Of a DNA stretch of 64,000 nt, positions 220-35,999 are shown in pieces; positions within the stretch are counted from its first letter, which is position 1; each line of letters opens with the position of its first letter. Position numbers and translations under genes: made by a program. Below the pieces are notes generated by a model that worked only from the letters and a program-made list of their open reading frames with translations, ran no database searches and was not told the origin of the DNA. The DNA comes from Hydrolagus colliei (Eukaryota): contig CM068771.1 in assembly GCA_035084275.1 (NCBI GenBank), positions 744,001 through 808,000 on the forward strand, given 5' to 3'.

Positions 220-365
220 CTAGAGCGAGCGCTGTTGGCCGTGGAGACGCTGCCTCTCTTTCAGCAGTAAGATGATGCCCACGATGGCACTGATGATTCC
301 CAGTGAGATTCCCAGAGCACAGACCACCGTCCCCGCTCCGCCCCGAGCCTCAGGCACCTTCGGCC
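220..365 (-). CDS. mhc2a: MHC class II alpha chain, exon 4 (connecting peptide, transmembrane, cytoplasmic tail, stop)
   Basis: Acceptor ctcactcag|GG at 366-367. Translates (G)PKVPEARGGAGTVVCALGISLGIISAIVGIILLLKERQRLHGQQRSL*, with the class II alpha TM motif VVCALGxxxGxxxxxxG and a KERQR tail as in shark class II alpha (recalled). Locus letter not assignable. Confidence 0.95.
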
Positions 366-959
366 CTGAGTGAGGAGAGAGGAGCAGCTCAGAGCTGGCA
401 CACAGTGGTATACATAGAGGGGGACAAAGGGACACAAACATATAGGGAAAGACAAAGGGGGGACAGTGCTGTGCACAACTGGCTGGTACATTTAGCCCAT
501 AAAATATAGACAATCCACTTTACAGTACTATATATTCAGTGAAGACACAAACAGCATCTGAGACGCACCAACACACACATCAAACCACAGGAACAGGAGG
601 CCATTCAGCTACTCAATCCTGTTCCACCATTCTATAAGATCATGTCTGATCTGTATCTCAAATCGAATTATCAGCCCTTGCCTCCTATCATTCCATTCTG
701 TGACCTAACAAACATTTATTCACTTCAATTTGAACAATGTGACTGGATCCAGTCATAACAGACAGGAGAGCGAGGGGCGGAGCGAGCAAAGCACAAATTA
801 AAAAACAATACATCCAGCAGGAAAATCAAATAGGGATGGCAGAGCTACATCATAATCAAATTGTTCTGAACCAGCAAACAATAACTACAAGCACTAAAAA
901 TAAAATATAGATACTTTTTACAAAATTAATTAAGAATTAAAAAAAATAATAAATAAAAC

Positions 960-3900: not shown

Positions 3901-4770
3901 CCGACAATAGAGATGAACCAAGGGCTAATGATAGGCAGCAACTTAGAGAAATTTGCATTAGCAAGGAATTGGTGCAAGGGAAATTGTTAGCACCAAAATG
4001 TGACAAGTGCCCTGGACCTGATGGTTTGCATCCTAGGATTTTAAAGGAAGTGGCTCATGAGATTGTAGAGGTCTTGTGTTTGATCTTCCAAAATTCCTTG
4101 GATTCTGGAATGGTTCCCATGGATTGGAAGATTGCAAACATCACACCACTATTTAAGAAGTGTGGGAAAGAAGGATGGGGAACTATAGACCAGTTAGTCT
4201 GACATCAGTGGTAGGGAAAATTCTAGAATACTATACTTGATTAAGAATGTTGTAGTGGGGTGCTTAGAGGATAACAATATAATTAGACAAAGTCAACATG
4301 GCTTTACAAAAGGGAAGTCATGCTTGACAAATCTTGTAGATTTTTTTGAGGTTATATCAAACAGATTAGACAGGGGGGAATCCGTGGATGTAGTGTATTT
4401 GGATTTCCAAAAGGCATTCGATAAGATGCCTCAAAAAACTTGATCCAAAAGGTAGATCCATGGATTTGGGGAAAATATATTCACATGGATTGAAGAATGG
4501 CTAACGGGAAGGATATTAAAAAGTAGGGATAAACAGGTCCTTCTCAGATTCACAGGATGTGACTAGTGGACTGCCACAAGGATCAGTGCTTGGGTGTCAA
4601 CTATTTACAATTTACATCAATGATCTAGATGAGGACATCAAACTTAAAATATCCAAATTCGCGGATGACACTAAATTGGGAGGGAGAATAAACACTGAGG
4701 ATGACATTTTAAAAAATGCAGCACAATATAGATAGGCTAGGTGAGTGGGCAGGTAGGTGGCAGATGAAAT
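960..4770 (+). mobile_element. Old degenerate CR1 LINE (ORF1 and ORF2 remnants), interrupted by a younger CR1
   Basis: ORF1 N-terminal CSKC remnant (~1040-1290), SGNH-esterase-like VVVIGD...CLPGA...HIGTND (2818-3111), endonuclease start (~3560-3730), RT fragments (3790-4700). Confidence 0.8.
1313..2779 (-). mobile_element. Young 5'-truncated CR1 LINE (RT to 3' end), one in-frame stop
   Basis: ORFs 2144-2752 and 1406-2140 (PQGSVLGP, FADD) separated by one W-to-stop codon. The 3' tail is the CR1-type (ATTCTATG)n-like repeat at ~1313-1340. Near-identical to 49111-50600. Confidence 0.95.
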
Positions 4771-4899
4771 GTAATGAGGCGCCATTCGGCGTGGAGGGCG
4801 CTATATAAATCGAAGTTGTTATTGTTGTTGTTAATGTGTGAAGTCATTCACCTAGGTGGTAAAAACAGTAGAGCAGATTATTTTTTAGAAGGGGATAGT

Positions 4900-7335
4900 G
4901 ATATGACGGAATCCCTAAATTAATACTTTGCATCTGTCTTCACCCTAGAAGACACAACAAGTCACCCAACAATAGGGATACACCAAGTGGTAAATGACAG
5001 GGAACAACTTAGGGAAATCTTCATTAGCAGAGAACTGGTGCTAGGGAAACTGCTGACACTAAAAATTGATAAATCCCCTAGTCCGGATGGCTTGCATCCC
5101 AGGGTCTTAAAAGAGGTAGTTTATGAGATAGTGGGTGCTTTGTGTCTATTCTTCCAAAATTCCTTGGATTCTGGAACAGTCCCCATGGATTGGAAGATCA
5201 CTAATGTCACACCACTATTTAAAAAGGGTGGAAAGGAAAAGATGGGGAACTATAGGCCAGTTAGTCTGACATTGGTGATAGGAAAAAATTTAGAATTCTT
5301 GATTAAGGATATTTTAGTGGGGTATTTAGGGGAGCACGATATAATTAGGCAAATTCAACATGACTTTACAAAACGGAAATCATGTTTGACAAATCTCACA
5401 GAATTTTTTGAGGATATTTCGAGTAAACTAGATAGAGGTGAATTAGTGGATATGGTCTATTTGGACTTCCAGAAGGCTATCGATAAGGTGCCGCATAAAA
5501 GATTGATGCAAAAGATAGGGGCTTACGGAATTGGGGGAACATATTAACATGGATTAGGGAATGGTTAACGGGTAGGAAACAAAGAGTAGGGATAAATGAT
5601 CCTTCTCAGATTGGCAGGATGTGACTAGTGGAGTGCCACAAGGATCAGTCCTTGGGTCTCAGCTATTTACCATCCACATCAACGATCTAGATAAGGACAT
5701 CGAGCTTAATATATCTAAATTTGCTGATGATATGAAAGTAGGAGGAAGCGTTAATACCAAGGATGACATTTAAAAAAGCAGCGCAATATAGATAGGTGAG
5801 TGGGCAGGTAGGTGGCAGATGAAGTATAATGCAGGGAAGTGCGAAGTCATCCATCTAGGTTGCAAAAATAGCAGAGCAGGTTATTTGTTAGAGGGTGAGA
5901 GATTGCAGAGGGACTTGGGTGTCCTTATACATCAAACACAGAAAGTTAGTAAGCAGGTGCATCAGGCAATTAGGAAGGCTAACGGTATGTTAGCTTTCAT
6001 TATAAAAGGGTTAGATTATACGAGTAGGGAAGTCTTGCTGCAGCTGTATATGGCCCTGGTGAGACCACATCTGGAATACTGTGTGCAGTTTTGGTCTCCT
6101 TATTTAAGAAAGGGTGTTCTTGCCTTGGAGGGAGTGCAACGAAGGTTCACAAAGTTAGTACCTGGAATGAGGGGGATGAGTTAAGATGATAGGTTGATTA
6201 ATTTGAGCCTATATTCTATGGAATATAGAAGAATTAGAGGGGATCTTTTAGAAAGCTGGAAGTTTATGAAGGGGCATGACAAAGTAGATAGTGGGAGATT
6301 GTTTCCCCTGGTTGGAGAATCTAAAACCAGGGGTCACAGTCTTAAAGTTAGGGGTCAGTCCTTTCACACTGAGTTGAGAAAAAAACGTTTTCACTCAGAG
6401 GGTGGTGAATGTATGGAATTCTTCACCTTAAAGGGCTGTTGATGCTCAGTCCTTGAACATATTCAAGACTGAGTTAGATAGATTTCTCATTTATAAAAGG
6501 ATTAAGGGGTATGGGGAGAAGGCAAGTAGCTGGAGTTAGAGTAGAATATCAGCCACGATTGAATGGCGGGGCAGGCTCGATGGGCCGAATGGCCTACTCC
6601 TGCTCCTATTTCTTACGTTCTTATGTTCTTAATGGGAGAGACTAAATAGTGTTAGCATTCAGAGGGACTTGGGTGTCCTTGTACACGAGTCACAAAAAGT
6701 TAGTCTGCAGGTACAGCAAGCAATTAGGAAGGCTAACGATATGTTGGCATTCATTATAAAAGGGTTAGAATATAAGAGTAGGGAAATCTTGCTGCAGCTA
6801 TATAGGGCCCTGGTGAGATTGCACCTGGAATATTGTGTGCAGTTTTGGTCTCCTTATTTGAGAAATTATGTGCTCGCCTTGGAGTCAACGTTGATTCACT
6901 AGGTTGGTACCTGGGATGAGGGGAATGAGTTATGAAGATAGGTCGAGCAATCTAGGCCTATATTCTCTAGAATATAGAAGAATTAGAGGTGATCTTATAG
7001 AAACCTACAAGATTATTAAGGGGCAAGACAGATTAGATAGTGGGAGACTATTTCACCTGGTTGCTCTGAAGATTAGGGTTCAGCCCTTTCGCAGAGTTGA
7101 GAAAAAACTTCTTCACTCAGAGGTTAGTGAATTTATGGAATTCTCTACTCCAAACGGCTGTGGATGCTCAGTCGTTGAACATATTCAAGACTGAGATTGG
7201 TAGATTTCTTATGGATAAAAGGATTAAGGAATATGGGGATAAGGCGGGTAGGTGGAGTTAGAATAGATCAGCCATGATCTTATTGAATGGCAGGGCAGGC
7301 TCGAGGGGCCGACTGGCCTACTCCTGCTCCTAATT
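4900..7335 (+). mobile_element. Two tandem older CR1 RT/3'-end fragments
   Basis: DKSPSPDGLHPR, NYRPVSLT, LVRPHLEYCVQFWSP motifs in broken ORFs. Two 3' tails (gttcttatgttctt) at ~6620 and ~7345. Confidence 0.85.
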
Positions 7336-7989
7336 CTTGTGTTCTTATGTTCTTCTAATCAACAGCCTTATGGGGAGCAAGAGAGAGAGTTCCAAATTCC
7401 CGCAGGCCTATGCGTGATTTCACTCCTAAATGCCCTGGTTCTGATTTTATGATTGTGCGCCCTTGTGCCGAGATTTGTTTTTAGTCCCATTATTTTCTGC
7501 AATACCATGTTTTACTAATATTAAATGCATTTAATACTTCTCCTGAGATTTTGTTAGATTCCTTTGTATAGCTGGTATTTTATCCTCTTCCTCTACTGTG
7601 AAAATGGAAGCAAACTATTTATGTAACAAGTCTGCCATTGCCTTATTTTCATTGTTAGCTTCATGCTGCCTCTTACATCTGTTGTGGACCATGGCTGTTG
7701 AATTGCACATGTGGAACTTTTTGTGTTTAGGGGTGTGTACTGGTATTGTATTGTCCCAAACATGTTAATGAAGATTTATGTGTGAATGTGGGTATATGCG
7801 GCGTCTGATGTGAAAAGCGCTATGTAAGTTTAATTTTGTTTTTGTTGTTGTTCAGCCATTAACAGCCCAGTTATTGTAGTTCATTCATATCTCATCCCTT
7901 CGAAGTTAACTACAGTATATGTGAATGTAAAACTTTGGTTTGTGCCTTTCCCACTTTCCGCCTAAAACTTACAGCAAATTCAGTCATAT

Positions 7990-8760
7990 TCAGGTCATTC
8001 TTTGCAAAATGTTCTCTTATCTGTTAGACAACCCCAACACACTCATTGAGACACTGCATCCCCTCCACCCCTCCACCCCCACATACACAATGAGAAGCAC
8101 ACAATCCCCACCCCAACCCTCCACACACACACACACACACATGCAAGGCACACCCAAACACATGCACACTGAGACACAAGCCCCCATACATAGCAAGACA
8201 AACCCCCCACACACAGAAACACCCACACACTCATTCTCACCCACACACTGAGACACCCCCACACACACACACTGAGACAATCCCCCCACATACACATTGA
8301 GACACCCCTTCACATACATACAATGAGGCAACCCCCACCCACCCACACAGAGACAGCCCCACATACACATAAACTGAGACAACACCCCCACACACACTGA
8401 GACATCCCCTCACACACACAGAGACACCCTCCCACACACATACACTGAGACAACCCCCCCCAAACATACTGAGACACCCCCTCACACACAGACAACCCCC
8501 CCACACACACAGAGGCACCCCCACACACACATACACTGAGACACCCCCCACCACACACACACAGAGACACCCCTCCACATACGCACTGAGATACCCCACC
8601 CACACACACATTGAGATACCCCCCGCTATACATACTCAGTCACCCACCCCTCACATACAGTGATGTGCTCACCTGCACACACTGAGACACCCGCCCCCAC
8701 CCCCATCCCACACACACTGAGACACCCTCCCACTGACCAACACACTGAGACACACCCAAA
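7990..8760. repeat. CA/C-rich low-complexity tandem repeat (cacactgagacacccc)n
   Basis: Degenerate ~20-bp units visible directly. Confidence 0.85.
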
Positions 8761-9494
8761 ACAATTACACTTGTATAGCACTTTTCATGTCAGAAGGACT
8801 TCCCAAGGCGCCGGACAGTCATTGTTTTAGGCGGAGCCTGCTGAGTGGAGGGCGCAGGCAGATTGGTAGGGGATTAGGAAGTTGCAGAGGTAGGGTGGGG
8901 TGAGGCCATGGAGGACTTTGAATATGAGGATCAGTATGTTGAATTAAATCCTCTGGGGCACCAATGGAGTTTCACGAGGATGCGGAGATGGGATCACGGA
9001 GCTTGGAGCGGCAGAGATGATGGGCCGCAGAGCCAATCAGGAGAGCCTCTGTCTTATTGACCTTCCACTGTAGAAAGTTAGCTCTCATCTGATATCTGAC
9101 AGATGATATCTGTCAGGACAGTGGTAGTCCTGGAGTCGAGGGTAGAAGCAGAGAGGTAGAGTTGGGTGTCATCCACATACATGTGGAAATTAACTCCATT
9201 TCTGCATATGATGTCACCAAAGAGGATAATGTAGGGGGTGGATACAGCCCCCACACAAACAAAATCAGACAGCCCCCACAGGCACACATAGACACCTCCC
9301 AACACACATATTCAGATACCTCCTCCCAGAAATACTTGTTCTTATCCCCTCACTGCTTCCCCTCACTGCACCGCAACCAATGCCCCACCTCACTAACACT
9401 GATAGCCCTCCTCACTACCACCTCACTGCTCCTCCTCACCGCCCCCACAACCCCCCCACAACTCCTCCCCTCACTGACCCCAGAAGTAGACTTA

Positions 9495-10800
9495 ATTGGC
9501 CATAATGTCGCCTATAATGGGCAACTTCAACCTCCACCTAAACTCCCCTTGAACCACATCTTCTAAATTCACTGCCTTGTTCTCCTTCCTGAACCTCACT
9601 CTTCACATAAACTCACTGATCCACAAACATGGCATCATCCTTGACCTCGTCATCACCCATGACCTTGACATTTCCAACGTGAGCATTATGAACAAGGCCA
9701 TTTCGGACCACTTCCTCATTTCCTTCTTCTTTCACATTCCTCTCTCCTCCACCAAGACCTCAACCATACTCTACCACCCATGGAAAAGGCTATCCCCTAA
9801 GACCCTCACAAAGGCCCTCATATCCTCCACCTGGTTTGAGTCCTACCTCATAAATGGCCAGCAGTACATCTCCACAAACAGTTTTTCCTCCCGCTCTAAT
9901 CTGGTTACCTGCACAGAACCCCAACGATCCATCCTTGGGCCTCTCCTCTTCCTAATCTATATGCTCCCTCTTGAGGATGTCATCCACAGACATGGGGCAC
10001 ACGTGTATGCGGATGACAATCAATTTTTCAACGTCACTTTGGAGCCCTGATATCTGTCAGCATGTCTGTCAGATATCAGGAGCTGGATGTGCACAAATTT
10101 TCTTCAGCTAAACATTGACAAATCAGAAGCCTTACTCTTTGGCTCTCATCAATGTCTTTGATTGCATGGCTCTCCCTACTCCACCTTCCTGACCTGCCCC
10201 TAGAACTCCGCAAACCCATACACAACTTATACGTCACGTTTGTCCCCCAATTGTACTTCCTCCCCTACATCTAGTCATTCACCAGCACTGCTTTCTTCCA
10301 TCTCCAACACGTCGACCGTCTCAGCCAATATCGCACATGAAAAGCCACCAAAAGCTCCCCCATTATCCCAGTCCTTGCCAGACTTCACTGGCTCCCTGTC
10401 CTGGAGAGGATCAATTTCAAGATCCTCGCTCTTGTTTTCAAATCCCTCCATCGTCTGCACCCCCCTACCTCTCTGACCTCTCTCACCAAACCAGCACCCG
10501 CTACCTTCCTTCCACTAGGTCTGGCTTCCTCCGTGTCTCCTGAATCCTCTGCTCCCATCAGTGGCCATGCCTTCAGCCACTATGCCCCAAGGCTCTGAAA
10601 TTCCCTTCCACACTCCCTTCACCTTGCCCCCTCTCTTCCTAGCTTCAGGTGTTGGCAAAAGACCTTTCTTTTCAACCGCTGTTTTGGTCAGCTTCTTCCC
10701 CTTACCCCTGGCTCAGTCCTGGGATCCATTGTTGGGAAGCGCTCTGAGATGCCATCTGGCGTGGAGGGCGCTATATGAATCCAAGTTGTTGTTTGTTGTT
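9495..10800 (+). mobile_element. L2 LINE fragments with 3' tail
   Basis: ILDLVITH, ISDHFLISF, PQRSILGPLLFLIYMLPL, YADD remnants, ending in ggcgctatat...gttgttgtt. Confidence 0.8.
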
Positions 10801-10981
10801 GCCCCCTCCATCACAGCCCCCCTCCCCACCCTCACTGACCCCAGAAGTAGACTGCGGGCTCCCTCAGGCTGTGGTGCTCCACACTGACCCTTCTCTGCCC
10901 CCTATACAACCTCATCCTCCCTCCTCTCATCACTGCCCACCTCACACCCTCCATCGCCCTTCCACCCAACCCATCACTGAC

Positions 10982-11263
10982 CCCAGAAGTGGACTGCGGG
11001 CTCCCTCAGACTGCGATGATCCACCTTGCAGGTAAACTCATCCCCAGGACGGGGTACGAAGCTCAGGTAGGTGAACCTCTGGAAAGAGTAATCCTTCTCC
11101 ATGTAATATTCAGTAATGTTCACACCCTCCTTCACCGGCTCGTTGTTCCTCAGCCAATTCATCATCAGCGCCGGGGGATAAAATCCAGCAGCGTGGCAGA
11201 TCAGCGTGTTCATCACACCCCATTCAATAGGTTTCTTAGGGTAAACAGCAATCTCTGGCTGGA
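10982..11263 (-). CDS. mhc2a: MHC class II alpha chain, exon 3 (alpha-2 Ig C1-set domain)
   Basis: 282 nt, phase 1/1, acceptor tccgcag|TC and donor TGG G|GTCAGT. Encodes IQPEIAVYPKKPIEWGVMNTLICHAAGFYPPALMMNW...NITE...FTCKVDHRSLREPAVHFW, with the C1-set C-W-C pattern and an NIT sequon. Confidence 0.97.
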
Positions 11264-11299
11264 CTGCGGAGAGAGAGAGAGAGAGAGAGAGAGTGATTG

Positions 11300-12060
11300 T
11301 GAGTGTTTGTACACCACCCACCTGGCTCACACACACAGTTTTCTCCATCCCCCACTCAGCTCACATTCACAGCATCGCAGAGAACACACACAGAGCATAC
11401 GCACACACACAGCCCACAGAAACAACAACCACAAAATTACATTGCTTTTCACGTTAGGAGGAGGCTCCAAGGCAAAGTCACAGAGCACACACACACACTA
11501 CACAAACAGAGAACACACATACACAACACCAACAGAGCACACACAGGGCACATACACACAGTGTACACAAACACACAGGAGGCACACACACAGGGTACAC
11601 ATACACATGGGGCACAAAAAGGGGCATATACACGGGGGGCACACGCAAACATGGGGTATACACACACACAGAGAGCACACACACAGAACACATATAGACA
11701 CATAGAACACACACACATGGGGTACACACACAGAGTACAGACACAGAGTATACAAAAACACATACAGAACATGCATACAAAGCACACACATACAAAGCAC
11801 AAACACACACAGCACACACACAGGGTACATGCACACCACACACACACATGCAGAGTGCACCACACACAATCACGTATAGACAGTGCACACAGACACACAC
11901 ACACAGTACACAAACAGAGCACACACACATACACAGCACACACATGCTGCACAAACACATTCACACACAAAGCACACATACACAAACACACATGTAGAGC
12001 ACACACACCAATAGAGCACATACTGACAGAGCACACATGAACAGAGCCCGCACACAGAAT
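11300..12060. repeat. (CA)-rich microsatellite-like tract in intron 2
   Basis: Degenerate CACA/CAGA repeats; source of several spurious ORFs. Confidence 0.9.
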
Positions 12061-12064
12061 AACA

Positions 12065-14650
12065 ACAAGATTACATTTGTAGCGTGCCTTTTGCATCCCA
12101 AGGTGCTGGACAGTCACGGGTCAGGACCGAAGCATGGTGATGGGGTGGTTGGGGTAGTGTTGAGATAAGGGAGGGTATAGAGGCAAGACAGCAACCGAAG
12201 GTACAGTCAAAGAGGATGGTCATGAGGCCAGCCTTGACGGAGGCAATGGAGGGAGTGAGACAAATGGATTGGGGTGGAGTTCCAGAGGATAGGGGCAGAG
12301 AGGCTGACAGGCCAGCTGCTAATGGCAGAGTAGGTTGGGTGGGAAACATGGAGCAGGCCAGAGCTGGACGGAGGAAGCGGATAGGTTGATAAGGGGTCAG
12401 TAGGTCAGAGAGGTAGGTGGGTGCAAGGCCGTGGATGGACTTGAAATTGAAGACAATGATCTTGAATTCAGTATTCTGAGGAATGGGGAGCCAGGGGAAC
12501 TGGAGCAGGATGGTGGTGATGGGGTCATGGAGTCTGATGTGGGAGAGGACATGAGCTGCAGAGTTTTGGATGATCTGCAGCTTGTGGAGGGAACAGTGGG
12601 AAGACCGACAAGGAAGGAGTTGGCGTAGTGAGCCAAAGATCACACAGAGCACATACACACAGAGCACAAACCCACACAGAGAGCACACACACAGACCACA
12701 CACACAGAGCATACACACAGAGCATACATACACACATACACACCAAGAGTACACACACACAGGGCAACAAACATATGGGGCACACACACGAGACATACAC
12801 ATGGGGCACACAACAATAACTTCGACAATACATACAGTATTACATTTGTAAAGTACCATTCACATCTGAAGGAAGTCCCAAAGCTCTGAATGGTCAGGGT
12901 TATTGACCAGAAAATGGGGGGTTGGGGGGCATGAATGAGATGAGGGAGAGCAGAGAGAGTAGGAGGGCGACTGAAAGAATCAAAGAGGACGGTCTTGAGA
13001 CCAGTCTTGAAGGAGGCACAGAAGGGAGCAAGGCAGAGGGGATGGAGTTCCAAAGTATAGGGGCAGAGAGGCTGAGAGGCATCCTACCATACCACTGATG
13101 GTAGGATGGGTTGAGCGGGAGACATGGAGCATCACTTCGTGGGAGATCCAGACAGCGGTGTGGCTGCTGCTGTGCGACCTGGCCGGACATGCTGTGTCTG
13201 AGGTACCAGGGCTGTCACCAAGTCACCGGGTACACCAGCTGAGGAGCCGGTCGGTTTTGGAGCCTGTCAATACACTGGGTCCTGTTTCCCACCATTTTAA
13301 AGATGGTCCAGTTGGGTGGTGAGGACAAGGAGTGGTTATTGGCTATTGTTGGTTTTGTTGTTTATTGTTGTTGTTTTATTCCCCCCCGCCACTGTCCCCT
13401 GCCCCCCTCCCCCCCCCCCCCCCCCCCCCAACTTCTTCTTCTTCCCTCACTCCCTTTCTCCACTTTCTCTCTCCCCTTTTCCCCTTCCCTCCCTCTTCCC
13501 TCTTACCCTCCTTTCTCCCTGATCTTGCCCCCCACCCACATTTCCCTCCCTCTCCCCCACTTATCCCATCTTCCCACCTGACATTACCCTAACCCACCTT
13601 TCCTTCCTTCTCCCCCTTACCCTCTTTTCCCCCTTTCTCCCCTGGCCCCATTTCCGCAACTGTTTGTGAGACATTGTTGTGCGCAATTTGGCCCTGTTTC
13701 ACCCACAAATATACAGTCGGCTTTCATGCTCTCCTTCCCCCTACCCTGAACTCTCCCCTTGTCATCTTTCCCCAATTGTTCCCCTAATCCCACTTACATG
13801 ACTGTTTGTGGGACACTGCTAGCAATTTGGCTGCCACGTTTCACCCATAAATATGCAGTCAATTTTCTTACTCTTTTTCATCCTGCCCTGACCTCTCCTC
13901 ACCTGCTCTTGTCCCTACCTGACTGTACAGCGCCTTGGGATGTCCTCTCGACGTGAAAGGCGCTATATAAATGTAAGTTTGGATTGATTGGAGCAGGACA
14001 GAGCCTGCTGAATGGAGCGGGTGGACAGGTTGATAGGGGGTCAGCAGGTAAGAGAGGTAGAGGTTTAAGATCAAGGAGGGCCTTGAAAGTGAGGACAAGG
14101 ATCTTGAATTCTATCCTTTGAGAAATGGGGAGCCAGTGGAGCTGGGCCAGGAAGGGTGATGGTGTCTCCAGTGGAGCTTGGTGTGAGAAAGGATACAAGC
14201 TGTGGAGTTTGGGATGATCTGCATCTTATGGAGGGCAGAGTTAGGAGACCGTCAAGGAGGGGGATTGTCGTAGTCGAGCCTTGAGGTGACAAATGCATGT
14301 GTAAGAGTTTCAGCGACCTGCAGGGAGTGAGTCAGTGATGGAAATGGGTGATGTTGCGGAGGTGGAAGGCAGTTGCTTGTCATGGCACTGAAATAGGGGA
14401 GAAAGGACAGTTCCAGGTGAAACAAGACACCCAGCTTCCTGAGTGGCTTAGTGAGGTGGAGTGTACATCTGTGAATACTGATGCTGCTGGTGTCTGAGGT
14501 GCAGAGGCAAGCCAATTAGGAGGGCCTCAGTATTGCTGACGTTCAGTTGGAGAAAGTTGTCTTTCAACCAGGACTTGACGTCTGACTGGCAGTCTGTCAG
14601 GACACCAGTAGCCTGGAGTTAATGTGGAGGCAGAGAGGTAGAGTTGGGTG
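12065..14650 (-). mobile_element. Cluster of L2 LINE 3' fragments interleaved with simple repeats and SINE tails
   Basis: Repeated KLQxIQNSAA...LHWLP...FKIL...HGLAP motifs on the minus strand, each ending in the aaaggcgct...(caa)n tail. Confidence 0.75.
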
Positions 14651-14809
14651 ATCATCCGCACACACACCAGGCACACACATACAGGGCAAACAAACACACC
14701 AGGCACACACACAAGCATGAGGCACACACACAGGACACACATACATGGGCACACAAACACAAGCATGGGGCACACACATTCAGCACTCAGACACATGGGA
14801 CACACTCAT

Positions 14810-15597
14810 CAATAATTTTAATGCAGAGAAGTGTGAGATTATACATTTTGGGAGAAGAAATGAGGGGAGACAATATAGGCTAGATAGTACAACTTTAAGG
14901 TGTGCGAGGGAACAGAGAGACCTGGGGATTTGAGTTATTGACTCTTTGAAGATGGCAGGTCAGGTAGACAAAGCCTTTAAGAAGGCATATGGGATACAAG
15001 ACTTTATAAATAAGGGCATAGAGTACAAAAGTCAGGAAGTGCTGACTAACCTTTATAAAACTTTGGTTAGGCCTCAGCTGGAGTACTGTGTTCAATTCTG
15101 GTCACCACACTATAGAAAGGATGTTACGGCATTGGAACGGGTGCAAAGAAGGTTTACTAGAATGGTACCAGGATTGAGGAATGGGGAAAGGCTAGATCGG
15201 CTAGGTTTATTCACTTTGGAACAGAGAAGGTTGAGAGGAGACCTAATAGAGGTTTATAAAATTATGAGGGGATTCGACAGGGGGAATAAGGAAAAACTGT
15301 TTTCACTGGTGGGCGAATCAGCGACTCGTAGTCACAGATTTTAAACAATTTCAAAACGAAGCAGAGGGGAGCTGAGGAGAAATGTTTTCACTCAGCGGGT
15401 TGTTAGAATCTGGAGTGCATTGCCTGAAAAGGTGGTGGAAGCTGATTCAATAACAGTTTTTAAGAGAATTAAATCGTTATTTAGGGAGAACAGGTCTGTT
15501 AGGTTATGGGGATTGAGTCACACTGTTCAAAGAACCGGCACAGACTGGATGGGACGAATGGCCTCCTTTTGTGCTGTAAGGCTCTATGATCCTATGA
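14810..15597 (+). mobile_element. CR1 3' fragment
   Basis: ORF 14946-15344 (KAYG...LVRPQLEYCVQFWSP) and a ctatgatcctatga tail. Confidence 0.88.
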
Positions 15598-15884
15598 TAA
15601 CAACAATTTGGAATTCTACTGTGCTCTCCACGTCGGATGGCATCTCAAAGTGCGGACACAGGGCATACACACAGAGCACACACTGATATGGTGCACACAT
15701 ACATATGAGGCACACACATGGGGCACACTCACACTCAGGGTGCATACACACACACACATGTTGTATATATACAACCAAGGGGCACACACACACAGAGCAA
15801 GCATACAAACGAAGGACCTACACACAGATGGGCACCCAGATATGGCACAAACTCACAATACAATATAGTATAATAATCATAATC

Positions 15885-16190
15885 CTTGCATTTGCTATAG
15901 CGCTTTTCACATTTTACCGACATTTCAAAGCACTTCACAGAATATACTGTAAAGTGAATTGATTGTATATTGGTGGATGAAATGCAGCAGCCAATTGCGC
16001 ACAGCTGCGTCCCACAAACAGTTGTGAATTGAAATAACCAATTTTTATTACTGTGTTTTTTTTGGAGAGATTATTATTAGGCATGTGGAGTAAGGAAACT
16101 TTCGCCCTGACCTGCCTGGAAATACAGGTTCAAACACTGGTCTCATGCTTGTAAGGCGAGAGCTCTAACCACTGAGCTACAACAACAACA
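15885..16190 (-). mobile_element. tRNA-derived SINE, near full length
   Basis: Head GTAGCTCAGTGGTTAGAGC (A box), degenerate B box, body ...gtgggac.gctgtgcgcaattggctgc..., tail aagcgctata..aaatgcaaggatt(att)n. Further copies at ~21035-21330, 28440-28745, 35518-35864. Confidence 0.8.
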
Positions 16191-16194
16191 ACGT

Positions 16195-17115
16195 CCCAAG
16201 GCACTGAACAGTCAGGTCCGGACTCGAGCAAGGGAGAAGGGCAGGGTAGGGTGCACACACAGGGCATGCACAAACAAGGAGTACCCTCACACACACCCTC
16301 ACACACAAGGAGTAGGGCAGGGGTGCGGAGAGTAGGAGAGGGGGAAGAGTTAAGAAGATAGCAGTAGGCACGGTCCAAGAGGAATGTTTTGAGACTGGCC
16401 TTGAAGGAGGAAAGGGAGGGAAGCAAGTCAAAGGGATTGCAGGATGGAGTTCCATAATGTGGGAGCAGAGAGGCAGAAAACTTGGCCACCGATGATGGTT
16501 TGGGCGGGGGACATGGAGCAGGCCAGAATCTGCTGAACAGAGGGGATGGGCAGGGCTGATAGGGAGACAGCAGGTCAGAGAGATAGGCGGGAGCAAGGCC
16601 ATGAATGGCTTTGAAAGTGAAGACGAGGATCATAAATTTGATTCTCTGGGGGATGGGGAATCCAGTGGAGACGGGCGAGGGTGGGAGTGATGTGGTTGCG
16701 GAACATGTTACAGCAGAGTACACGAGCTGCAGAATTCAGAATTAGTTTGCAGTTTGGGAAGGAAGGAGCTGGGGAGGCCGACAAGGAGAGAGTTCCCGTA
16801 GTCAAACCTTGATGTGATGAATGCGTGAACAAGTGTTTTGGCAGCATGGGTGGGTGAAGTAGTGGTGGAGTCTGGCAATGTTACGGAGGTGATGGAAGGC
16901 AATACTGGTCATGGCACGGATATGGGGGAGGAAGGACAGTTCAGGGTCGAACAAAGCGCCTAGATTCCTGACTGGCTTAGAGAGGTGGAGAGTATAGCCT
17001 TGAATGCTGATGTTGCCAGCGCCTGAGATGCAGAGGCGGTGTTGCAAGCCAATCAGGAGGGACTCCATCTTGTTGACAACACTCTTGTTGAAGGAAGTTG
17101 TCCCTTGTCCAGGAC
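16195..17115 (-). mobile_element. L2 LINE RT/3' fragment
   Basis: AKTLVHAFITSRFDYGNSLLVGLP and FKAIHGLAPAYLSDLL motifs. Confidence 0.82.
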
Positions 17116-17335
17116 TCGTTGGACAGACACGCAATGAGAACGTGTGAACACACACATGTACACACAAACAGAGAGTGCACACACAGCACACAAACACAAA
17201 GCACAAGCAAACATCCACACAGGGCAGATACACACACACAAAGAGCACTCACACAACAACAGTATTATTATACAGGACACTCCACGCAGTCTGGTGACTT
17301 AAAATGTTTAAATGTGGTGGAGCCTGACTTCTAGA

Positions 17336-18215
17336 AGGGGATGGTGTGTGCGCGGGTGGTGTGTGTGGGGGGAGATGGTGTGTGGGGGGATGGTGTGTGT
17401 GGGGGAGGGGATGGTGAGTGTGGGGGGATGGTGTGTGGGGAGGGATGGTGTGTGTGGGGGGATGGTGTGTGTGGGGGGGGGATGGTGAGTGTGGGGGGAT
17501 GGTGTGTGGGGAGGGATGGTGTGTGGGGGGGATGGTGTGTGGGGGGGGGGATGGTGTGTGTGGGGGGGGATGGTGTGTGGGGGGGGATGGTGTGTGGGGG
17601 GGGATGGTGTGTGGGGGGGATGGTGTGTGGGGGGGATGGTGTGTGGGGGGGATGGTGTGTGGGGGGGATGGTGTGTGGGGGGGATGGTGTGTGGGGGGGA
17701 TGGTGTGTGGGGGGGATGGTGTGTGTGTGTGTGTGTGGATGGTGTGTGGGGGGATGGTGTGTGGGGGAGATGGTGTGTGTGGGGGGATGTTGTGTGTGTG
17801 TGGGGGGATGGTGTGTGTGTGTCTGGGGGGATGGTGTGTGTGTGTGGGGGGATGGTGTGTGTGGCGATGGTGTGTGTGTGTGGATGGTGTGTGTGTGGGG
17901 GGGGATGGTGTGTGTGGCGATGGTGTGTGTGTGTGGATGGTGTGTGCGGGAGATAGTGTGTGGGGGGGATGTTGTGTGGGGGGGGGGTGGTGTGTGTGTG
18001 GGGGGGAATGGTGTGTGTGGGGGGATGGTGTGTGTGTGGGTGGGGATGGTGTGTGTGGGTGGGGATGGTGTGTGTGGGGGGAGGATGGTGTGTGTGTGTG
18101 GATGGTGTGTGAGGGAGATAGTGTGTGTGGGGGGGATGGTGTGGGTGGGGGGGGATGGTGTGTGGGGGGGGTGGTGTATGTGTGGGGGGATGGTGTATGG
18201 GGGGGTTGTGGTGTG
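17336..18215 (+). repeat. G-rich satellite (GGGGGGATGGTGTGT)n, ~880 bp
   Basis: Directly visible ~14-18 bp units with G4-G8 runs; ends ~300 bp from the exon 2 donor. Confidence 0.95.
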
Positions 18216-18522
18216 TGTCGGTGGGGAGGTGGCAGTTGGGAGGGGTTTGGTGGGACCTGAAAGGTTGGGGAGAGTGGGCGAAGCGGAGGGATTGAAGGAG
18301 AGTATTCCAGAGTTTGGAATTTGGAAAGCAGGATCTCCGGAGTTTGGGGGGGAGGGAGGAGCAGGAGCCGGTGCTAGGAGATGGGAGAGGTCGGGAAGAG
18401 CCAGGGAGTACTTCACACACACCCCCCAGTGTGCTGTATATACACACACAGTGACTATAAACACACGCAGCACTGTACACCCCCCCCCCCCCCCCCCCCT
18501 CCCAGTGTATTTGCTGACTCAC

Positions 18523-18780
18523 TGCTGGGCTCCGGGGTGTCTCCGTGTGAAAGCTGTTTCCAGACACGTACGCTGATTTTACAGGTTTGAATCTCCTGTA
18601 ACACCCCCTCCACTCCGCCCTGGATACTGTGCCCGTCGAATTCAGGCAGGCGGGCGACCTCCTTCCCCAGGGCAAAATCCATGTAAAACAGCTCATCCCA
18701 GTCAACCTCAATATCAAACTGCTGGACAGGGGCCTGGTCCTGGTCCTGACACAGGTACACCAACGAATCATCGTGTAAAT
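18523..18780 (-). CDS. mhc2a: MHC class II alpha chain, exon 2 (alpha-1 peptide-binding domain)
   Basis: 258 nt, phase 1/1, acceptor tttgtgtcag|AT and donor AGC A|GTGAGT. Encodes YLHDDSLVYLCQDQDQAPVQQFDIEVDWDELFYMDFALGKEVARLPEFDGHSIQGGVEGVLQEIQTCKISVRVWKQLSHGDTPEPS, with DxDELFY and RLPEF motifs. Confidence 0.96.
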
Positions 18781-18799
18781 CTGACACAAACACAAACTA

Positions 18800-19510
18800 C
18801 CTACAGGTTAGACACACACACTACACACACTGCACACTCTGTAAACACTACACACACTCTACACACTGCACACATACACTTTAAAAACTGTACACACACT
18901 CTACACACTGGACACTCACTGTAAACACTACTCACTACTCGTACTGCACACACTGTACACTGTAAACACTGCACATACTCAACACTCACTGTACACTCTC
19001 TGTGCACACTACACATTCTGTATCCACTGTACACACACTGTAAACACTGCACACATAAACACACTGTACACAATGTAAACACTGCACATTATTCACACAC
19101 TGCAAATTGCAAACACTACACACTATACACTCTGTATACATGGTACACGAATTGTACACACTGTAAACACACTGCGCATACACTGTAAACACACTGCACA
19201 CACCACACACAGTGTACACACAGTAATCACTGCCCACATTGGAAACATACTGCAAACACAGTACACACATTGTACACACTGTAAACACTGTACACACTCT
19301 ACACACTAAATACTACATACACTGCACATTGTTTACACTGAGTGTGCAGTGTTTACAATGTACACACAGTAATCACTGCACACACACTCTACACACACTC
19401 TACAAACTGTAAATACTACACACACTATACACACTAAACACCCTCCATACTGTACACACAGTACCTACTGCAAATACTGCACGTTGTAGACACCTCACAC
19501 AGTGTACACA
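18800..19510. repeat. (acacactgta)n-type low-complexity tract in intron 1
   Basis: Directly visible degenerate CA-rich repeats. Confidence 0.85.
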
Positions 19511-22500
19511 CAGTTCCTCAGGGTTCTGTCCTTGGCCCCCTGCTCTTCATCCTCCACATGCTCCCCCTCGGTGACACCATCCAGACATGGGGTAAATTTC
19601 CACATGTATGCGGCTGACACCCAACTCTACCTTTCCGCTTCCACCCTCGACTCCAGGACTACTGCATCTTGGCAAGCGCCTGGGAACTTTCAGCGCCTTG
19701 GGACGTCCTCCCGATGTGAAAGGCGCTCTATCAATGTAATTTTTTTGTTGTTGTACTGACGTTTCTGACTGCGTCCAACATTGAGTCCTGGATGAGGGAC
19801 AACTTCCTTCAACTAAACACCACACTATCAGAGACCCTCCTGATTGGCTTGCGTAAGCACCTCCGCACCTCAGGCACTGGCAGCATCAGCATTCACGGTT
19901 ATACTCTCCACCTCTAGAAGCCAATCAGGAATCTGTGTGTCTTGTGGAACTCCATCCCGCAACTCCTCCACCTCGCTTCCTCCCTTTCCTCCTTCAAGGC
20001 CAGTCTCAAGACCTTCCTCTTCGACCGCGCCTTCGGCTGCCTCACTAACTCTCCCCCCTCTCCCCCTCTCCTTCCCCCATACTTTGACCTTCCCCACCCC
20101 CCCCACCCAGCATCCTTCGGGTCCCGAACAGACTGTTTAGCACTTTGGGACATCCTCCCGACGTGAAAGGTGCTATACAAGTACAATTTTGTTGTTGTTG
20201 TTCGACAATGAACTGTCCTTCCTCCCCTAAGCTGAATCTGATTGAATGACAACTTTTATGAGAGAAGTTGTTATTTATTTGGGAAGGACAGGTTGCATGG
20301 CTTTTGGTAGAAAGTGAGAGGGATTGATTAGGTCAGCTCTTGTGGACAGTCATCACAGACATGATGGGCTGAAAGGCCTCCTTCTGCGCTGTATAATTCT
20401 GTGGTTACCATCATCACTATCATCACCTGGGACCCTGGGTTTAATGATGATCGTTCTGTTCCTTCAGACCAAGTGTCTTCATCAGATTATCCTGATTGAT
20501 TATAGTATCTACCACTCCTATGACTGGCCTTGGTACCTAACACTTACTCAGCTGGTATTTCTGGTTTGCGCTAATTATCTCAACAGAGAGATAGTGATGG
20601 ACAACCGTTTGTGATGGACAACCTTTGAGAAGCCTCATCGAATACCATTGCTTCATCTCCTTCACTCTTTGTCCCTTCTGATTGGATTGTTAATTAATCG
20701 TTATGCATAAGATGTATTTGATTATTTACCATTCATAACTATACTAACCATTTACAGTATATTCTATGAAGTGCTTGGAGGCGTCTAGAAGATGTGAAAA
20801 GTGCTATAACAAATGCAAGGATTATTATTAGAATTATTATAATTAATCTGAGATAATAAATCTATTAATATAATAAATTAAATTTATAAAAGTAAGGATA
20901 TGCACAAATGTGGTACAATTAAATTTATAAATTTAATTGTACCACATTTGTGCATATCCTTACTTCATTGGTGGGTCACAAATTATAACAGAACCCTTAA
21001 CATAGACACTGTGCACATATTGTAAATACACAGTACATAATAATGCTTGCATTTTGATATAGTGCTTTTCTTATCGATCGATGTCTCAAAGCGCTTCACA
21101 GAATATACTGTAAAGTGAATTGATTATATACTTGTGTTTGAAAAGCAACAGCCAATTGCACACAGCAGTGTCCCCAGAAACAGTCATGGATTGAAATGAC
21201 CAATTTTATTATTGTTGGTTTTTGTGGACGGATTATTATTAGGCGTGTAGAGTAAGGAAACTTGCCCGAGGTTTTGCCCTGACCTGCCTGGATTTGAACA
21301 CAGGCTCTTACCACTGAGCTGCAGGAGCTCCACATAACCAGGAGCTCGACAAAAACACATGTACACACATACTGTACACACACTGTACGCAGAGTCTGTA
21401 GATACACACTATATTCACTGAACACACACGGCGAACACACTCAACATATACCATGTCTACACACTGTGTACACACACTATACACATACACACTAAACACT
21501 CACTGTAGACATACACCACAGGCACTGTACAGACACTGTTCACACAATATACACACTATACAACACTGCACACTCTGTACACAAACACTATACAAAACAC
21601 ACGGTGTGTATTTACACTGTAAAGACACTGTACATACAAAATGCACACATACACTGTACACACACACTGTATATGCATGATTCACATTGTACAAACACAG
21701 CGCAAACAGCAGACACTATACACATTGTTCACACAACAACAGTATGTAATAATAGACAACAACAACAACAACAAAATTACATTTGTATCGCACATTCCAC
21801 ATCAGGAGGATGTCCCAAGGCGCTGGTCAGTTACTGCTTCAACAGACAGCGCCCAGTATGTGGGGTAGTGTGCCGGGGCGCTTCCCAGTGGCAGAGTCTG
21901 GCACTGAGCCAGGGGGAGAGGGAGTGGGGGAGGGGGTGACCATGAGCACAATAAAAAGAAAGGTCGTTAGGTGGGATTTGAAAGTGGGGAGCGAGGGGGC
22001 AAGGCAGAGGGATCAAGGGAACACATGCCAGAGCTTTGAGGTGTATTGACTGAAAGCCCGGCCACTGATGGTGGAGTGGAGGGTTGAACAGAATGAAGGA
22101 TTGAACAGAAAGTCGAAGCCAGCCAAGTGTAGGCAGTGGATGGTGGGGTGGGGGGGCCTAAGCAGATTGGTGAGGTAGGGACATCCTCCCAACGTGAAAG
22201 GCATCTATCAATTAAATTTTGTTGTTGTTGATGTAGGTAGGTATGTGGGCATGAGGGATTTTAAACTAGTGTGAGGATCTCGAAGTTGATCCGTTTAGTG
22301 ATTGGGAGCCAGTGGAGAGCTGGGGCAATAAGGGTACAGAGTTTAGTGTATGATAGGGAGTGAGTGGAGCCAGGTGAGAGCTGTGGTGATGGGGGTACAG
22401 AGTTTTATGCCTTTGACATTGGGGCTATGGTTAGATCTCTGCCTTGCCCCCTCGCTCCCAACTTTCATTCATTAGGAGGCGCACAGAACACATTATACAT

Positions 22501-22544
22501 ACACACTGATTCTACACACTCTATATACTGAAAAAAATGCTCAC

Positions 22545-22825
22545 ACACTGACTGGAATAACACACTGGTCATCATTCTGACTGTAATAACACATTATCCC
22601 TCACATTGACACTGTCGGCATTAACATTAGCACATCGACAGTAATAGCACTGAGTGTAATAACACACGATAAATAATAACACGGTCCACATTAACACACT
22701 GACTGTAATAACACTGACTGTAATAATGCTGACGCTAACAACATGGGGTGTAATAGCATACTGACTGTAATAACACACTCACTATAGTTACACGCTGACT
22801 GTAATAACACTGACTGTAATAGAAC
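22545..22825. repeat. (acactgactgtaata)n tandem repeat at the start of intron 1
   Basis: About 15-20 bp degenerate units. Confidence 0.75.
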
Positions 22826-22853
22826 ATGGATGACTGTTACTGTAAAGTCTCAC

Positions 22854-22917
22854 ATTTGGCAGCCCCCACCGCCTGGGCGAGGATCAGGGTCGCGGTGATG
22901 AGGAATGTTGCTCCCAT
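22854..22917 (-). CDS. mhc2a: MHC class II alpha chain, exon 1 (signal peptide)
   Basis: ATG at 22917, MGATFLITATLILAQAVGAAK plus 1 nt, donor AAA T|GTGAGA. Phase matches exon 2, and it lies ~80 bp downstream of the Y box. Confidence 0.92.
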
Positions 22918-22998: not shown

Positions 22999-23039
22999 CC
23001 AATCACACGGCCGCCTCTCACAACTCACTTGTTGCTGGG
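22999..23039 (-). promoter_or_regulatory. Proximal MHC class II X1-X2-Y promoter module
   Basis: Minus strand: X1 CCCAGCAACAAGTG (23039-23026), overlapping X2-like TGAGTTG, 19-bp spacer, Y box GTGATTGG (23006-22999). Matches the RFX/CREB/NF-Y module and its 19-20 bp X-Y spacing. S box not securely identified. Confidence 0.85.
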
Positions 23040-34919: not shown

Positions 34920-34926
34920 TTTATTG

Positions 34927-35870: not shown

Positions 35871-35986
35871 TGCTTACCATTGAAAGGTAGGAGGTGTTCA
35901 TATTGTTTTGATAAACATGTTATTTCAGCTCCGGTGTCAAGGAGGCATTCAACGTCACGATGGCCCACTCTCAGAGTAACGTATAG
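35871..35986 (-). pseudogene. pro: ERV aspartic protease N-terminus
   Basis: LYVTLRVGHRDVECLLDTGAEITC with the DTG active site; truncated by a SINE. Confidence 0.9.
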
Positions 35987-35999
35987 TCAGTCCTCCCTG

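What the first reader, a model, noticed from the sequence alone, without database searches (positions are those of the whole stretch)
18523..18780. Non-classical alpha-1 domain: Cys13-Cys66 pair with loss of Asn62 and Asn69
Seen: Cys codons at 18751-18749 (YLCQ) and 18583-18581 (QTCK); helix reads GVLQEIQTCKISV where classical chains read GALANIAVDKANL; DGDE becomes DWDE. Established: alphaN62 and alphaN69 hydrogen-bond the peptide backbone in classical class II, and the 13-66 disulfide is typical of teleost alpha chains and DM-alpha but, as I recall, absent from classical nurse shark DAA. Inference: a transcribable non-classical chondrichthyan class II lineage with an altered groove (non-peptide ligand or chaperone/editor role) in a group reported to lack DM.
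Basis: partly seen in the sequence, partly recalled or inferred. Interest (0 to 1): 0.75.

Follow-up and report, generated by a model that had tools for sequence, protein, structure and literature searches.

The report
Chimaera-type MHC class II alpha gene
The flagged exon belongs to an intact MHC class II alpha-chain gene of a chimaera-like cartilaginous fish; the cysteine pair and the missing asparagines are already-described or recurrent traits of ordinary class II genes in this group, so it is mostly ordinary, apart from an unusually diverged groove helix.

Summary
Window 18780..18523 (minus strand) is a 258-nt, phase 1-1 alpha-1 exon (Pfam MHC_II_alpha, E=9e-13) with Cys13, Trp28, Glu62, Cys66 and Ser69 in HLA-DRA numbering.

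It is exon 2 of an intact four-exon, 249-aa class II alpha gene spanning 22917..220, with canonical splice sites and an X-Y-box-like promoter.

The non-classical reading is not supported by the features cited:
- All 14 expressed Callorhinchus milii class II alpha cDNAs carry Cys13, Cys66 and Trp28. The Cys pair is published for C. milii as a probably ancestral trait.
- Alpha62 is N, G, Q or D among those cDNAs, and is reported as hypervariable and positively selected in chondrichthyans.
- Ser69 recurs in classical-type shark sequences. One shark sequence has S62 plus S69.

In trees the gene is sister to the C. milii sequences (99/95; alpha-2 alone 100/100), inside the chondrichthyan clade and far from DM alpha.

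One oddity remains. The alpha-1 helix (residues 56-70) carries more changes at otherwise conserved chondrichthyan sites than any of 28 comparators, giving the longest alpha-1 branch, while alpha-2 and the transmembrane exon are ordinary. Species, polymorphism, expression and the beta partner could not be tested.

The parts
22999..23036 (-). Putative X-box (CCCAGCAACAAGTG) and Y-box (GTGATTGG, inverted CCAAT) promoter module. It lies 82-119 bp upstream of the ATG, with 22 nt between the end of X1 and ATTGG.
   Evidence: Sequence read. The pattern AGCAAC-N(20-32)-ATTGG occurs twice in the window against 0.53 expected, so position rather than count is what matters. The match to the class II SXY consensus is from memory, so this is a lead and not a test.
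22854..22917 (-). Exon 1: ATG plus signal peptide MGATFLITATLILAQAVGAAK, then the first base of the Tyr codon. Donor is T|gtgaga.
   Evidence: Sequence. tblastn to the C. milii K4GAB5 leader gives 81% identity.
18523..18780 (-). Exon 2: alpha-1 (peptide-binding) domain, 258 nt, phase 1-1. This is the finding itself.
   Evidence: The AlphaFold2 model of this exon shows four strands plus one long helix, pLDDT 78.5. Its best structural matches are class II alpha-1 domains.
18749..18751 (-). Cys alpha13 codon (TGT), at the end of floor strand S1.
   Evidence: It falls in the same alignment column as the Cys of all C. milii cDNAs and of amphibian DM alpha.
18734..18748 (-). CAGGACCAGGACCAG: an in-frame 6-nt slippage duplication. 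It gives QDQDQ where C. milii has QDE, in the S1-S2 loop.
   Evidence: Sequence. Two-residue insertion seen in alignments A1 and A2. This is the low-pLDDT block of residues 11-20.
18698..18700 (-). Trp alpha28 codon (DWDE instead of DGDE).
   Evidence: W28 is shared with every C. milii sequence, while elasmobranchs have G/D/R/N.
18569..18613 (-). Alpha-1 helix segment alpha56-70 (VEGVLQEIQTCKISV). Contains E62 (18595-18593), C66 (18583-18581), S69 (18574-18572) and a cluster of changes at otherwise conserved sites (E56V, A57E, I59V, S60L, A61Q, A64Q, N69S, L70V).
10982..11263 (-). Exon 3: alpha-2 Ig C1-set domain, 282 nt, phase 1-1, with Cys107 and Cys163 and the NIT glycosylation site.
   Evidence: Pfam C1-set E=4e-21. 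It is the only C1-set exon in the window.
220..365 (-). Exon 4: connecting peptide, transmembrane helix (CALGISLGIISAIVG motif) and cytoplasmic tail KERQRLHGQQRSL, with stop TAG at 222-220.
   Evidence: It is 85-90% identical (41-43 of 48 residues) to C. milii variants.
10829..10882 (-). A 54-nt duplicate of the exon-3/intron-3 junction, lying inside intron 3. Probably inert.
   Evidence: 89% identity to 10971-11024; VEHHSLREPAVYF.

Best explanation
This is exon 2 of an intact MHC class II alpha-chain gene of a holocephalan (chimaera-type) cartilaginous fish. It belongs to the same lineage as the expressed, polymorphic class II alpha genes of Callorhinchus milii.

Inferred mechanism:
- A signal peptide directs the chain into the ER.
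- The alpha-1 domain forms half of the peptide groove. Its helix is tied to floor strand S1 by a Cys13-Cys66 disulfide, the arrangement also found in DM alpha, teleost alpha chains and coelacanth.
- The C1-set alpha-2 domain and the Gly-rich transmembrane helix pair it with a class II beta chain.
- The heterodimer presents peptides in a DM-less loading system.

Glu62 sits at a site that varies freely in chondrichthyans. Ser69 is a recurrent, still hydrogen-bond-capable replacement of Asn69.

What is shown: the gene structure, family membership, phylogenetic position and residue states. What is inferred: the disulfide, beta pairing, peptide presentation and expression.
For: - Gene model: all four coding exons have GT-AG junctions and one open 249-aa frame.
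- Family: Pfam MHC_II_alpha and C1-set.
- Similarity: 72-75% identity to 14 C. milii cDNA-derived proteins.
- Position: sister to C. milii with 99/95 support inside the chondrichthyan clade, with DM alpha on a separate 100/100 branch. With alpha-2 alone, window plus C. milii is 100/100 and the window branch is ordinary at 0.148.
- Retained structural residues: H5/D27 salt bridge, D29/E30, C107/C163, and the transmembrane C-x2-G-x3-G-x6-G motif. There is no N-glycosylation site in alpha-1, as reported for C. milii.
- The flagged residues: C13, W28 and C66 are shared with every C. milii sequence and the Cys pair is published. Alpha62 is N/G/Q/D in C. milii and E in Pristiophorus. S69 is in three shark sequences here, two species in published Table 1, and Hemiscyllium.
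- Divergence level: per-domain divergence from C. milii (alpha-1 56-62%, alpha-2 77-80%, CP/TM/CY 85-90% identity) resembles that between classical genes of different elasmobranch orders, or between the two class II alpha genes annotated within Heterodontus and within Scyliorhinus (possibly the published DAA/DBA lineages; not assigned here).
- Fold: the AF2 alpha-1 model has the canonical fold and matches classical I-A, DQ and DR slightly better (TMq 0.71-0.80) than DM (0.67-0.68).
Against: - No other sequence in the set combines E62 with S69 on a C13/C66 background, and N69 is kept in all C. milii variants.
- The alpha-1 domain has six changes at sites that are at least 90% conserved in the other 28 chondrichthyan sequences (K20Q, K39G, E56V, A57E, A61Q, A64Q). 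Most other sequences have 0-2 and Heterodontus_b has 4.
- It has the longest alpha-1 terminal branch, 0.56 against a median of 0.19.
- Its helix segment is only 38% identical on average to elasmobranchs, against 47-53% for C. milii.
- Polymorphism, expression, the beta partner and MHC linkage were not testable. No beta gene lies in the 64 kb.
- The exact protein, or anything above 75% identical, is absent from the protein collections searched.
Confidence: 0.72

Rival explanations
1. A specialised or non-classical holocephalan class II alpha lineage. An old duplicate kept the alpha-2, transmembrane and beta-pairing scaffold. Its alpha-1 helix was remodelled at backbone-binding sites (62, 69) and at upward-facing sites (39, 57, 61, 64, which are TCR contacts in mammalian structures, from memory). 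It would then bind a different ligand set, dock T-cell receptors differently, or act as a loading accessory in a DM-less system.
For: - There is a cluster of changes at otherwise conserved helix positions, the most of any sequence compared.
- Relative rate against C. milii, using the elasmobranch consensus: alpha-1 14 vs 5 (p=0.064), alpha-2 4 vs 2.
- It has the longest alpha-1 branch with an ordinary alpha-2 branch.
- Helix identity to C. milii is 38-53% while floor identity is 64-77%.
- In teleosts, joint loss of alphaN62 and alphaN69 accompanies non-classical status (PMC4219347).
- The gene is absent from the 14 C. milii cDNAs and from all protein collections searched.
Against: - The relative-rate excess is not significant.
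- Position 69 is Ser (polar, and seen in classical-type sharks), not hydrophobic as in DM and teleost DB.
- All scaffold residues are kept.
- Total divergence is no greater than between classical genes of different orders.
- Heterodontus_b shows changes at the same sites (K39Q, A61S, A64S) in an annotated class II alpha gene.
- If the window comes from a species other than C. milii, this may simply be that species' only alpha gene.
- Almeida et al. found no divergent class II genes in chondrichthyans, although they sampled only one holocephalan.
Confidence: 0.17
2. A redundant gene copy under relaxed constraint, such as a recently silenced paralogue on its way to becoming a pseudogene. Its alpha-1 changes would then be drift rather than function.
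For: - There is an excess of substitutions at conserved alpha-1 sites.
- The introns are very large and full of transposable elements: 4.1, 7.3 and 10.6 kb with LINE copies and a minisatellite.
- A junction duplicate lies in intron 3.
- There is no nearby beta gene.
Against: - There is no stop codon, frameshift or broken splice site in 249 codons spread over 22.7 kb.
- Alpha-2 and the transmembrane exon show ordinary conservation (4 unique alpha-2 changes; 85-90% identity in exon 4), which argues for purifying selection.
- The changes are localised to one helix rather than spread evenly.
Confidence: 0.08

Closest known systems
Callorhinchus milii (elephant shark) MHC class II alpha chains (UniProt K4GAB5, K4GIJ4, K4GBN4 and others; cDNAs of Venkatesh et al. 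2014)
   Same: Same 4-part architecture and near-identical length (249 vs 247 aa). Shares Cys13, Trp28, Cys66, the lack of an alpha-1 N-glycosylation site, 21 derived alpha-2 states, and the transmembrane and tail motifs. Sister group in trees.
   Different: Only 72-75% identical overall. Has E62 (C. milii: N/G/Q/D) and S69 (C. milii: always N). Carries a 2-residue QD insertion. Has V72/L76 like elasmobranchs where C. milii has G72. The helix at positions 56-64 is remodelled.
Elasmobranch class II alpha genes (published DAA/DBA lineages of Almeida et al. 2020; nurse shark Q31397, whale shark, white shark, catshark)
   Same: Same family and clade. Alpha62 is hypervariable. S69 is present in Rhincodon, Carcharodon, Chiloscyllium and Hemiscyllium. 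E62 is present in Pristiophorus. W43 is absent. The level of divergence from C. milii matches that between the two class II alpha genes annotated within Heterodontus and within Scyliorhinus. Those pairs were not assigned to DAA or DBA here.
   Different: Elasmobranch chains lack the Cys13-Cys66 pair and have G (or D/R/N) at position 28. Identity is 50-58%.
DM alpha (HLA-DMA and amphibian DMA)
   Same: Both alpha-1 cysteines fall in the same alignment columns as the DM alpha pair that ties the helix to the floor (literature quoted).
   Different: Only 26-29% identical. DM alpha sits on a separate 100/100 clade. DM has R at the column for position 69 in the amphibian sequences, and Q30 instead of E30. 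The structural match of the model is slightly worse to DM than to classical chains.
Teleost non-classical DB/DE-group alpha chains (e.g. salmon DCA, DDA, DEA)
   Different: Those chains mostly have a hydrophobic residue at 69 and were classed non-classical from low polymorphism and low or odd expression, which are untested here. No teleost sequence was retrieved for the tree. The window gene is firmly within chondrichthyans.

Membership tests
MHC class II alpha chain | N-terminal MHC_II_alpha (alpha-1) domain | tested here: met
   Pfam PF00993 E=9.2e-13, 48.2 bits against a cut-off of 23. Matches PDB class II alpha chains. The AF2 fold has four strands plus a helix. Foldseek hits are class II alpha-1 domains.
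MHC class II alpha chain | Membrane-proximal Ig C1-set domain with the Cys107-Cys163 pair | tested here: met
   Pfam PF07654 E=4e-21. C107 and C163 are present.
MHC class II alpha chain | Four-exon layout (leader / alpha-1 / alpha-2 / CP-TM-CY) with phase-1 junctions and a Gly-rich transmembrane helix | tested here: met
   Exons at 22917-22854, 18780-18523, 11263-10982 and 365-220, all with GT-AG junctions. The transmembrane motif is CALGISLGIISAIVG.
Classical (peptide-presenting) class II | Backbone-binding Asn at alpha62 and alpha69 | tested here: not met
   The window has E62 and S69. This criterion is not defining within chondrichthyans. Alpha62 is hypervariable there, and S69 occurs in classical-type sharks.
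Classical (peptide-presenting) class II | High allelic polymorphism concentrated in groove residues | not testable with these tools
   Only one haplotype is in hand. No near-identical sequences exist in the collections.
Classical (peptide-presenting) class II | Strong expression in antigen-presenting tissues | not testable with these tools
   No read data are available. There is only an X/Y-box-like promoter arrangement.
Classical (peptide-presenting) class II | Close linkage to a partner beta gene in the MHC | tested here: inconclusive
   No beta-1 or second C1-set exon lies within the 64 kb. The gene's 3' end lies 220 bp from the window edge, so the downstream side is unseen.
Classical (peptide-presenting) class II | Phylogenetic clustering with known classical genes of the same taxon | tested here: met
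   Sister to the polymorphic expressed C. milii sequences: 99/95 with alpha-1 plus alpha-2, and 100/100 with alpha-2 alone.
DM alpha (peptide editor) | Clusters with DM alpha and shares DM-specific residues | tested here: not met
   Separate 100/100 clade and 26-29% identity. Only the Cys pair is shared, and that pair is also found in classical teleost, coelacanth and C. milii chains.
Holocephalan class II alpha (C. milii type) | Cys13 + Cys66, Trp28, no alpha-1 N-glycosylation site | tested here: met
   All are present. The alpha-1 exon contains no Asn at all. This matches the description of C. milii in PMC8010645.

The most novel reading that the evidence does not exclude
Holocephalans may carry a second, old class II alpha lineage. 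It would keep the heterodimer scaffold (alpha-2, transmembrane helix, Cys13-Cys66), but its groove helix has been rebuilt at both backbone-binding sites (E62, S69) and at normally invariant upward-facing sites (K39G, A57E, A61Q, A64Q). That would be a candidate non-classical or specialised class II molecule in a vertebrate group that has no DM and, reportedly, no canonical CD4.
Probability: 0.15. Interest if true: 0.6.

Novelty: new member of a known kind. Interest (0 to 1): 0.27.

Why it matters
Cartilaginous fish are the oldest living group with an MHC-based immune system. Chimaeras are its least sampled branch: the only comprehensive survey used a single holocephalan species.

As an ordinary class II alpha gene, this locus mainly adds a second holocephalan data point. 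It confirms that the Cys13-Cys66 disulfide and Trp28 are holocephalan traits rather than a peculiarity of one gene. It also shows that alpha62 and alpha69 cannot be used as classical/non-classical markers in chondrichthyans.

It would matter more if the diverged alpha-1 helix marks a separate lineage that coexists with a C. milii-like gene in one genome. [quoted passage not shown]

Tried and rejected
- Beta gene or other MHC exon in the window: regex and HMM scans of all six frames found only the one alpha-1 and one alpha-2 exon.
- Species identification: the exact 249-aa protein is not in the 15-billion-protein collection. A search with the alpha-1 ORF found nothing. The best relatives remain C. 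milii at 72-75%, so the species is unresolved. It is holocephalan-like, and neither shown nor excluded to be C. milii.
- Whole-library HMMER search with the alpha-1 exon: it returned only two shark class II alpha representatives and no closer or stranger family.
No coordinates are returned, so the Cys-Cys distance could not be measured. Foldseek does not discriminate classical from DM strongly.
- Supplementary FASTA files of Almeida et al. are not held, so I could not check whether this sequence is already in their C. milii set.
- Concentration of differences at groove positions: not seen (6/20 groove sites vs 19/64 others). The differences concentrate by segment (the helix) rather than by the published contact list.
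- W-category or DM membership was considered and rejected on phylogeny and identity.

Full report
**1. What is at the coordinates**

On the minus strand, window 18780..18523 is a 258-nt exon. It is bounded by an AG acceptor (tgtgtcag|AT) and a GT donor (AGC A|gtgagt), and is phase 1 at both ends. In frame it encodes LHDDSLVYLCQDQDQAPVQQFDIEVDWDELFYMDFALGKEVARLPEFDGHSIQGGVEGVLQEIQTCKISVRVWKQLSHGDTPEPS.

- The exon is a class II alpha-1 domain: Pfam PF00993 scores E=9.2e-13.
- The best PDB matches are I-A, DM and DR alpha chains.
- A family HMM built here hits it at E=1.7e-34, and it is the only alpha-1 hit in the window.

**2. The whole gene**

tblastn with the relatives found and direct reading give a complete four-exon gene on the minus strand:

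| Exon | Coordinates | Content |
|---|---|---|
| 1 | 22917-22854 | Signal peptide |
| 2 | 18780-18523 | Alpha-1 |
| 3 | 11263-10982 | Alpha-2, C1-set, Pfam E=4e-21 |
| 4 | 365-220 | Connecting peptide, transmembrane helix, tail and stop |

- All junctions are GT-AG and phase 1, and the reading frame is open for 249 residues.
- The introns are 4.1, 7.3 and 10.6 kb and are filled with LINE copies and simple repeats.
- At 82-119 bp upstream of the ATG lies CCCAGCAACAAGTG-N22-ATTGG. From memory of the class II SXY consensus, this resembles an X1 box and a Y box at the usual spacing. I treat it as a lead only.
- No beta-chain exon or second Ig C1 exon exists in the 64 kb.
- The gene's 3' end is 220 bp from the window edge, so a downstream partner could not be seen.

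**3. Relatives**

The closest proteins are 14 cDNA-derived MHC class II alpha chains of the elephant shark Callorhinchus milii, at 72-75% identity. Next come shark and ray class II alpha chains at 50-58%, then bony-vertebrate classical chains at 31-36%, then amphibian DM alpha at 26-29%.

- The exact protein is not in the 15-billion-sequence collection.
- Nothing closer than C. milii turned up, including with the alpha-1 exon alone against 1.8 billion representatives.
- The source is therefore holocephalan-like. I cannot say whether it is C. milii itself or another chimaera.

**4. Phylogeny**

An IQ-TREE analysis of alpha-1 plus alpha-2 puts the window gene as sister to the C. milii sequences (99/95). 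It falls inside the chondrichthyan clade, with DM alpha on a separate 100/100 branch. With alpha-2 alone, window plus C. milii is 100/100, and the window's terminal branch (0.148) is ordinary.

**5.

I used a DRA-like sequence in the alignment as a ruler. None of these separates the gene from ordinary chondrichthyan class II:

- **C13, W28, C66.** These are in every C. milii cDNA.
- **Published status of the Cys pair.** Almeida et al. 2020 (PMC8010645) state that C. milii differs from elasmobranchs by Cys at alpha13 and alpha66. They note these also occur in teleost DA/DB/DE and coelacanth classical chains, and may be an ancestral trait.
- **Alpha62.** It is N, G, Q or D among the C. milii cDNAs and E in Pristiophorus. 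The same paper reports alpha62 as highly variable and positively selected in chondrichthyans.
- **S69.** It occurs in Rhincodon, Carcharodon and Chiloscyllium sequences here and in Carcharodon and Isurus in the published Table 1. Hemiscyllium P0062 has S62 together with S69.
- **Teleost rule.** The rule that joint loss of N62 and N69 marks non-classical genes (PMC4219347) therefore does not carry over to this group. At position 69 those teleost chains and DM mostly have a hydrophobic residue, not Ser.

Venkatesh et al. 2014 describe the C. milii class II genes as polymorphic. The gene's nearest relatives are therefore expressed, polymorphic, classical-type sequences.

**6. What remains unusual**

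I compared each of 29 chondrichthyan sequences against the other 28. The window's alpha-1 has six replacements at sites at least 90% conserved in the rest: K20Q, K39G, E56V, A57E, A61Q and A64Q. All others have 0-2, except Heterodontus_b with four, at overlapping sites K39Q, G58V, A61S and A64S.

| Measure | Window | Comparison |
|---|---|---|
| Alpha-1 changes vs elasmobranch consensus | 14 window-only | 5 C. milii-only (p=0.064) |
| Alpha-2 changes vs elasmobranch consensus | 4 window-only | 2 C. milii-only |
| Helix (51-80) identity to C. milii | 38-53% | floor identity 64-77% |
| Helix mean identity to elasmobranchs | 0.38 | 0.47-0.53 for C. milii |
| Floor mean identity to elasmobranchs | 0.57 | 0.54-0.56 for C. 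milii |
| Alpha-2 mean identity to elasmobranchs | 0.57 | 0.55-0.56 for C. milii |
| Alpha-1 terminal branch | 0.56 (longest of all chondrichthyans) | median 0.19 |

- The changes cluster in helix residues 56-70.
- Floor and alpha-2 are as conserved in the window as in C. milii, or slightly more so.
- From memory of mammalian structures, positions 39, 57, 61 and 64 face upward towards the T-cell receptor, and 62 and 69 bind the peptide backbone. This mapping was not tested here.
- The excess is suggestive but not statistically secure, and the comparison rests on a single other holocephalan species.

**7. Structure**

AlphaFold2 on the alpha-1 exon with 39 homologues gives the canonical four strands plus one long helix, with mean pLDDT 78.5. 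Cys13 lies at the end of strand 1 and Cys66 in the helix. Foldseek matches classical I-A, DQ and DR alpha-1 domains (TMq 0.71-0.80) slightly better than HLA-DM (0.67-0.68). Coordinates are not returned, so the disulfide geometry could not be measured. The disulfide is inferred from column identity with the DM alpha cysteines and from the literature.

**8. Interpretation**

The best-supported reading (about 0.72) is an ordinary, intact, classical-type holocephalan class II alpha gene. It is either the orthologue of the C. milii genes in another chimaera, or an old allelic or paralogous lineage. Its per-domain divergence from C. milii is comparable to that between the two class II alpha genes annotated within Heterodontus and within Scyliorhinus. 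I did not assign those pairs to the published DAA/DBA lineages.

The rivals are a specialised or non-classical lineage with a rebuilt helix (about 0.17) and a redundant copy drifting under relaxed constraint (about 0.08). The drift reading is opposed by the intact frame and the well-conserved alpha-2 and transmembrane exons.

Separating these needs expression, polymorphism, the gene count in the source genome and orthologues from other chimaeras. None of these could be reached with the tools here.

**9. Verdict**

I rate it a new member of a known kind, with modest interest.

Noticed in passing
window 10829-10882 vs 10971-11024: A 54-nt copy (89% identical) of the exon-3/intron-3 junction lies 142 bp downstream inside intron 3. 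It encodes VEHHSLREPAVYF and carries a decoy donor region. This is a small local duplication.
   Followed up: partly
window 17337-18231 and 18480-18499: Intron 2 holds a 17-nt minisatellite (GGGGATGGTGTGTGTGG, about 50 copies). It also has a run of 20 G (minus strand) beginning about 24 nt after the exon-2 donor. Such tracts could hinder assembly or sequencing next to the polymorphic exon.
   Followed up: no
window 18734-18748: (CAGGAC)2CAG slippage inside exon 2 adds two residues (QDQDQ vs QDE in C. milii) in the S1-S2 loop. This is an in-frame length variant of the alpha-1 domain.
   Followed up: partly
window ~34400-38000, minus strand: A degraded endogenous-retrovirus-like remnant. It has an envelope TM piece with the CX6CC-type motif (Pfam TLV_coat, 34500-34808), an integrase fragment (35233-35514) and a protease fragment (35498-35986). 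Most of pol is missing.
   Followed up: partly
window 1498-2779 and 49316-50595; also 3858-7191, 14721-15683, 39314-40339: There are several LINE reverse-transcriptase copies (Pfam RVT_1). Two are 97.8% identical over 1.28 kb, implying a recently active family. One sits in intron 3 of the class II gene.
   Followed up: partly
window 50876-63473 (related pieces 45384-48315); N gap 45224-45379: A roughly 4.08-kb unit is repeated in tandem at least three times at 96-97% identity, with partial 90-93% relatives upstream next to the 156-nt assembly gap. Its content looks non-coding or repeat-derived. The gap was left untouched.
   Followed up: no
related proteins P0033 (Heterodontus francisci) and P0062 (Hemiscyllium ocellatum): Heterodontus_b carries changes at the same normally conserved helix sites as the window gene (K39Q, G58V, A61S, A64S). 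Hemiscyllium has S62 plus S69. Helix remodelling and double Asn loss thus recur in annotated shark class II alpha genes and may deserve a systematic survey.
   Followed up: partly
literature, PMC8010645: The Results of Almeida et al. 2020 say chondrichthyan alpha-1 domains have no intradomain disulfide. Their Discussion notes Cys alpha13/alpha66 in C. milii. The holocephalan disulfide is therefore easy to overlook when reading that paper.
   Followed up: yes
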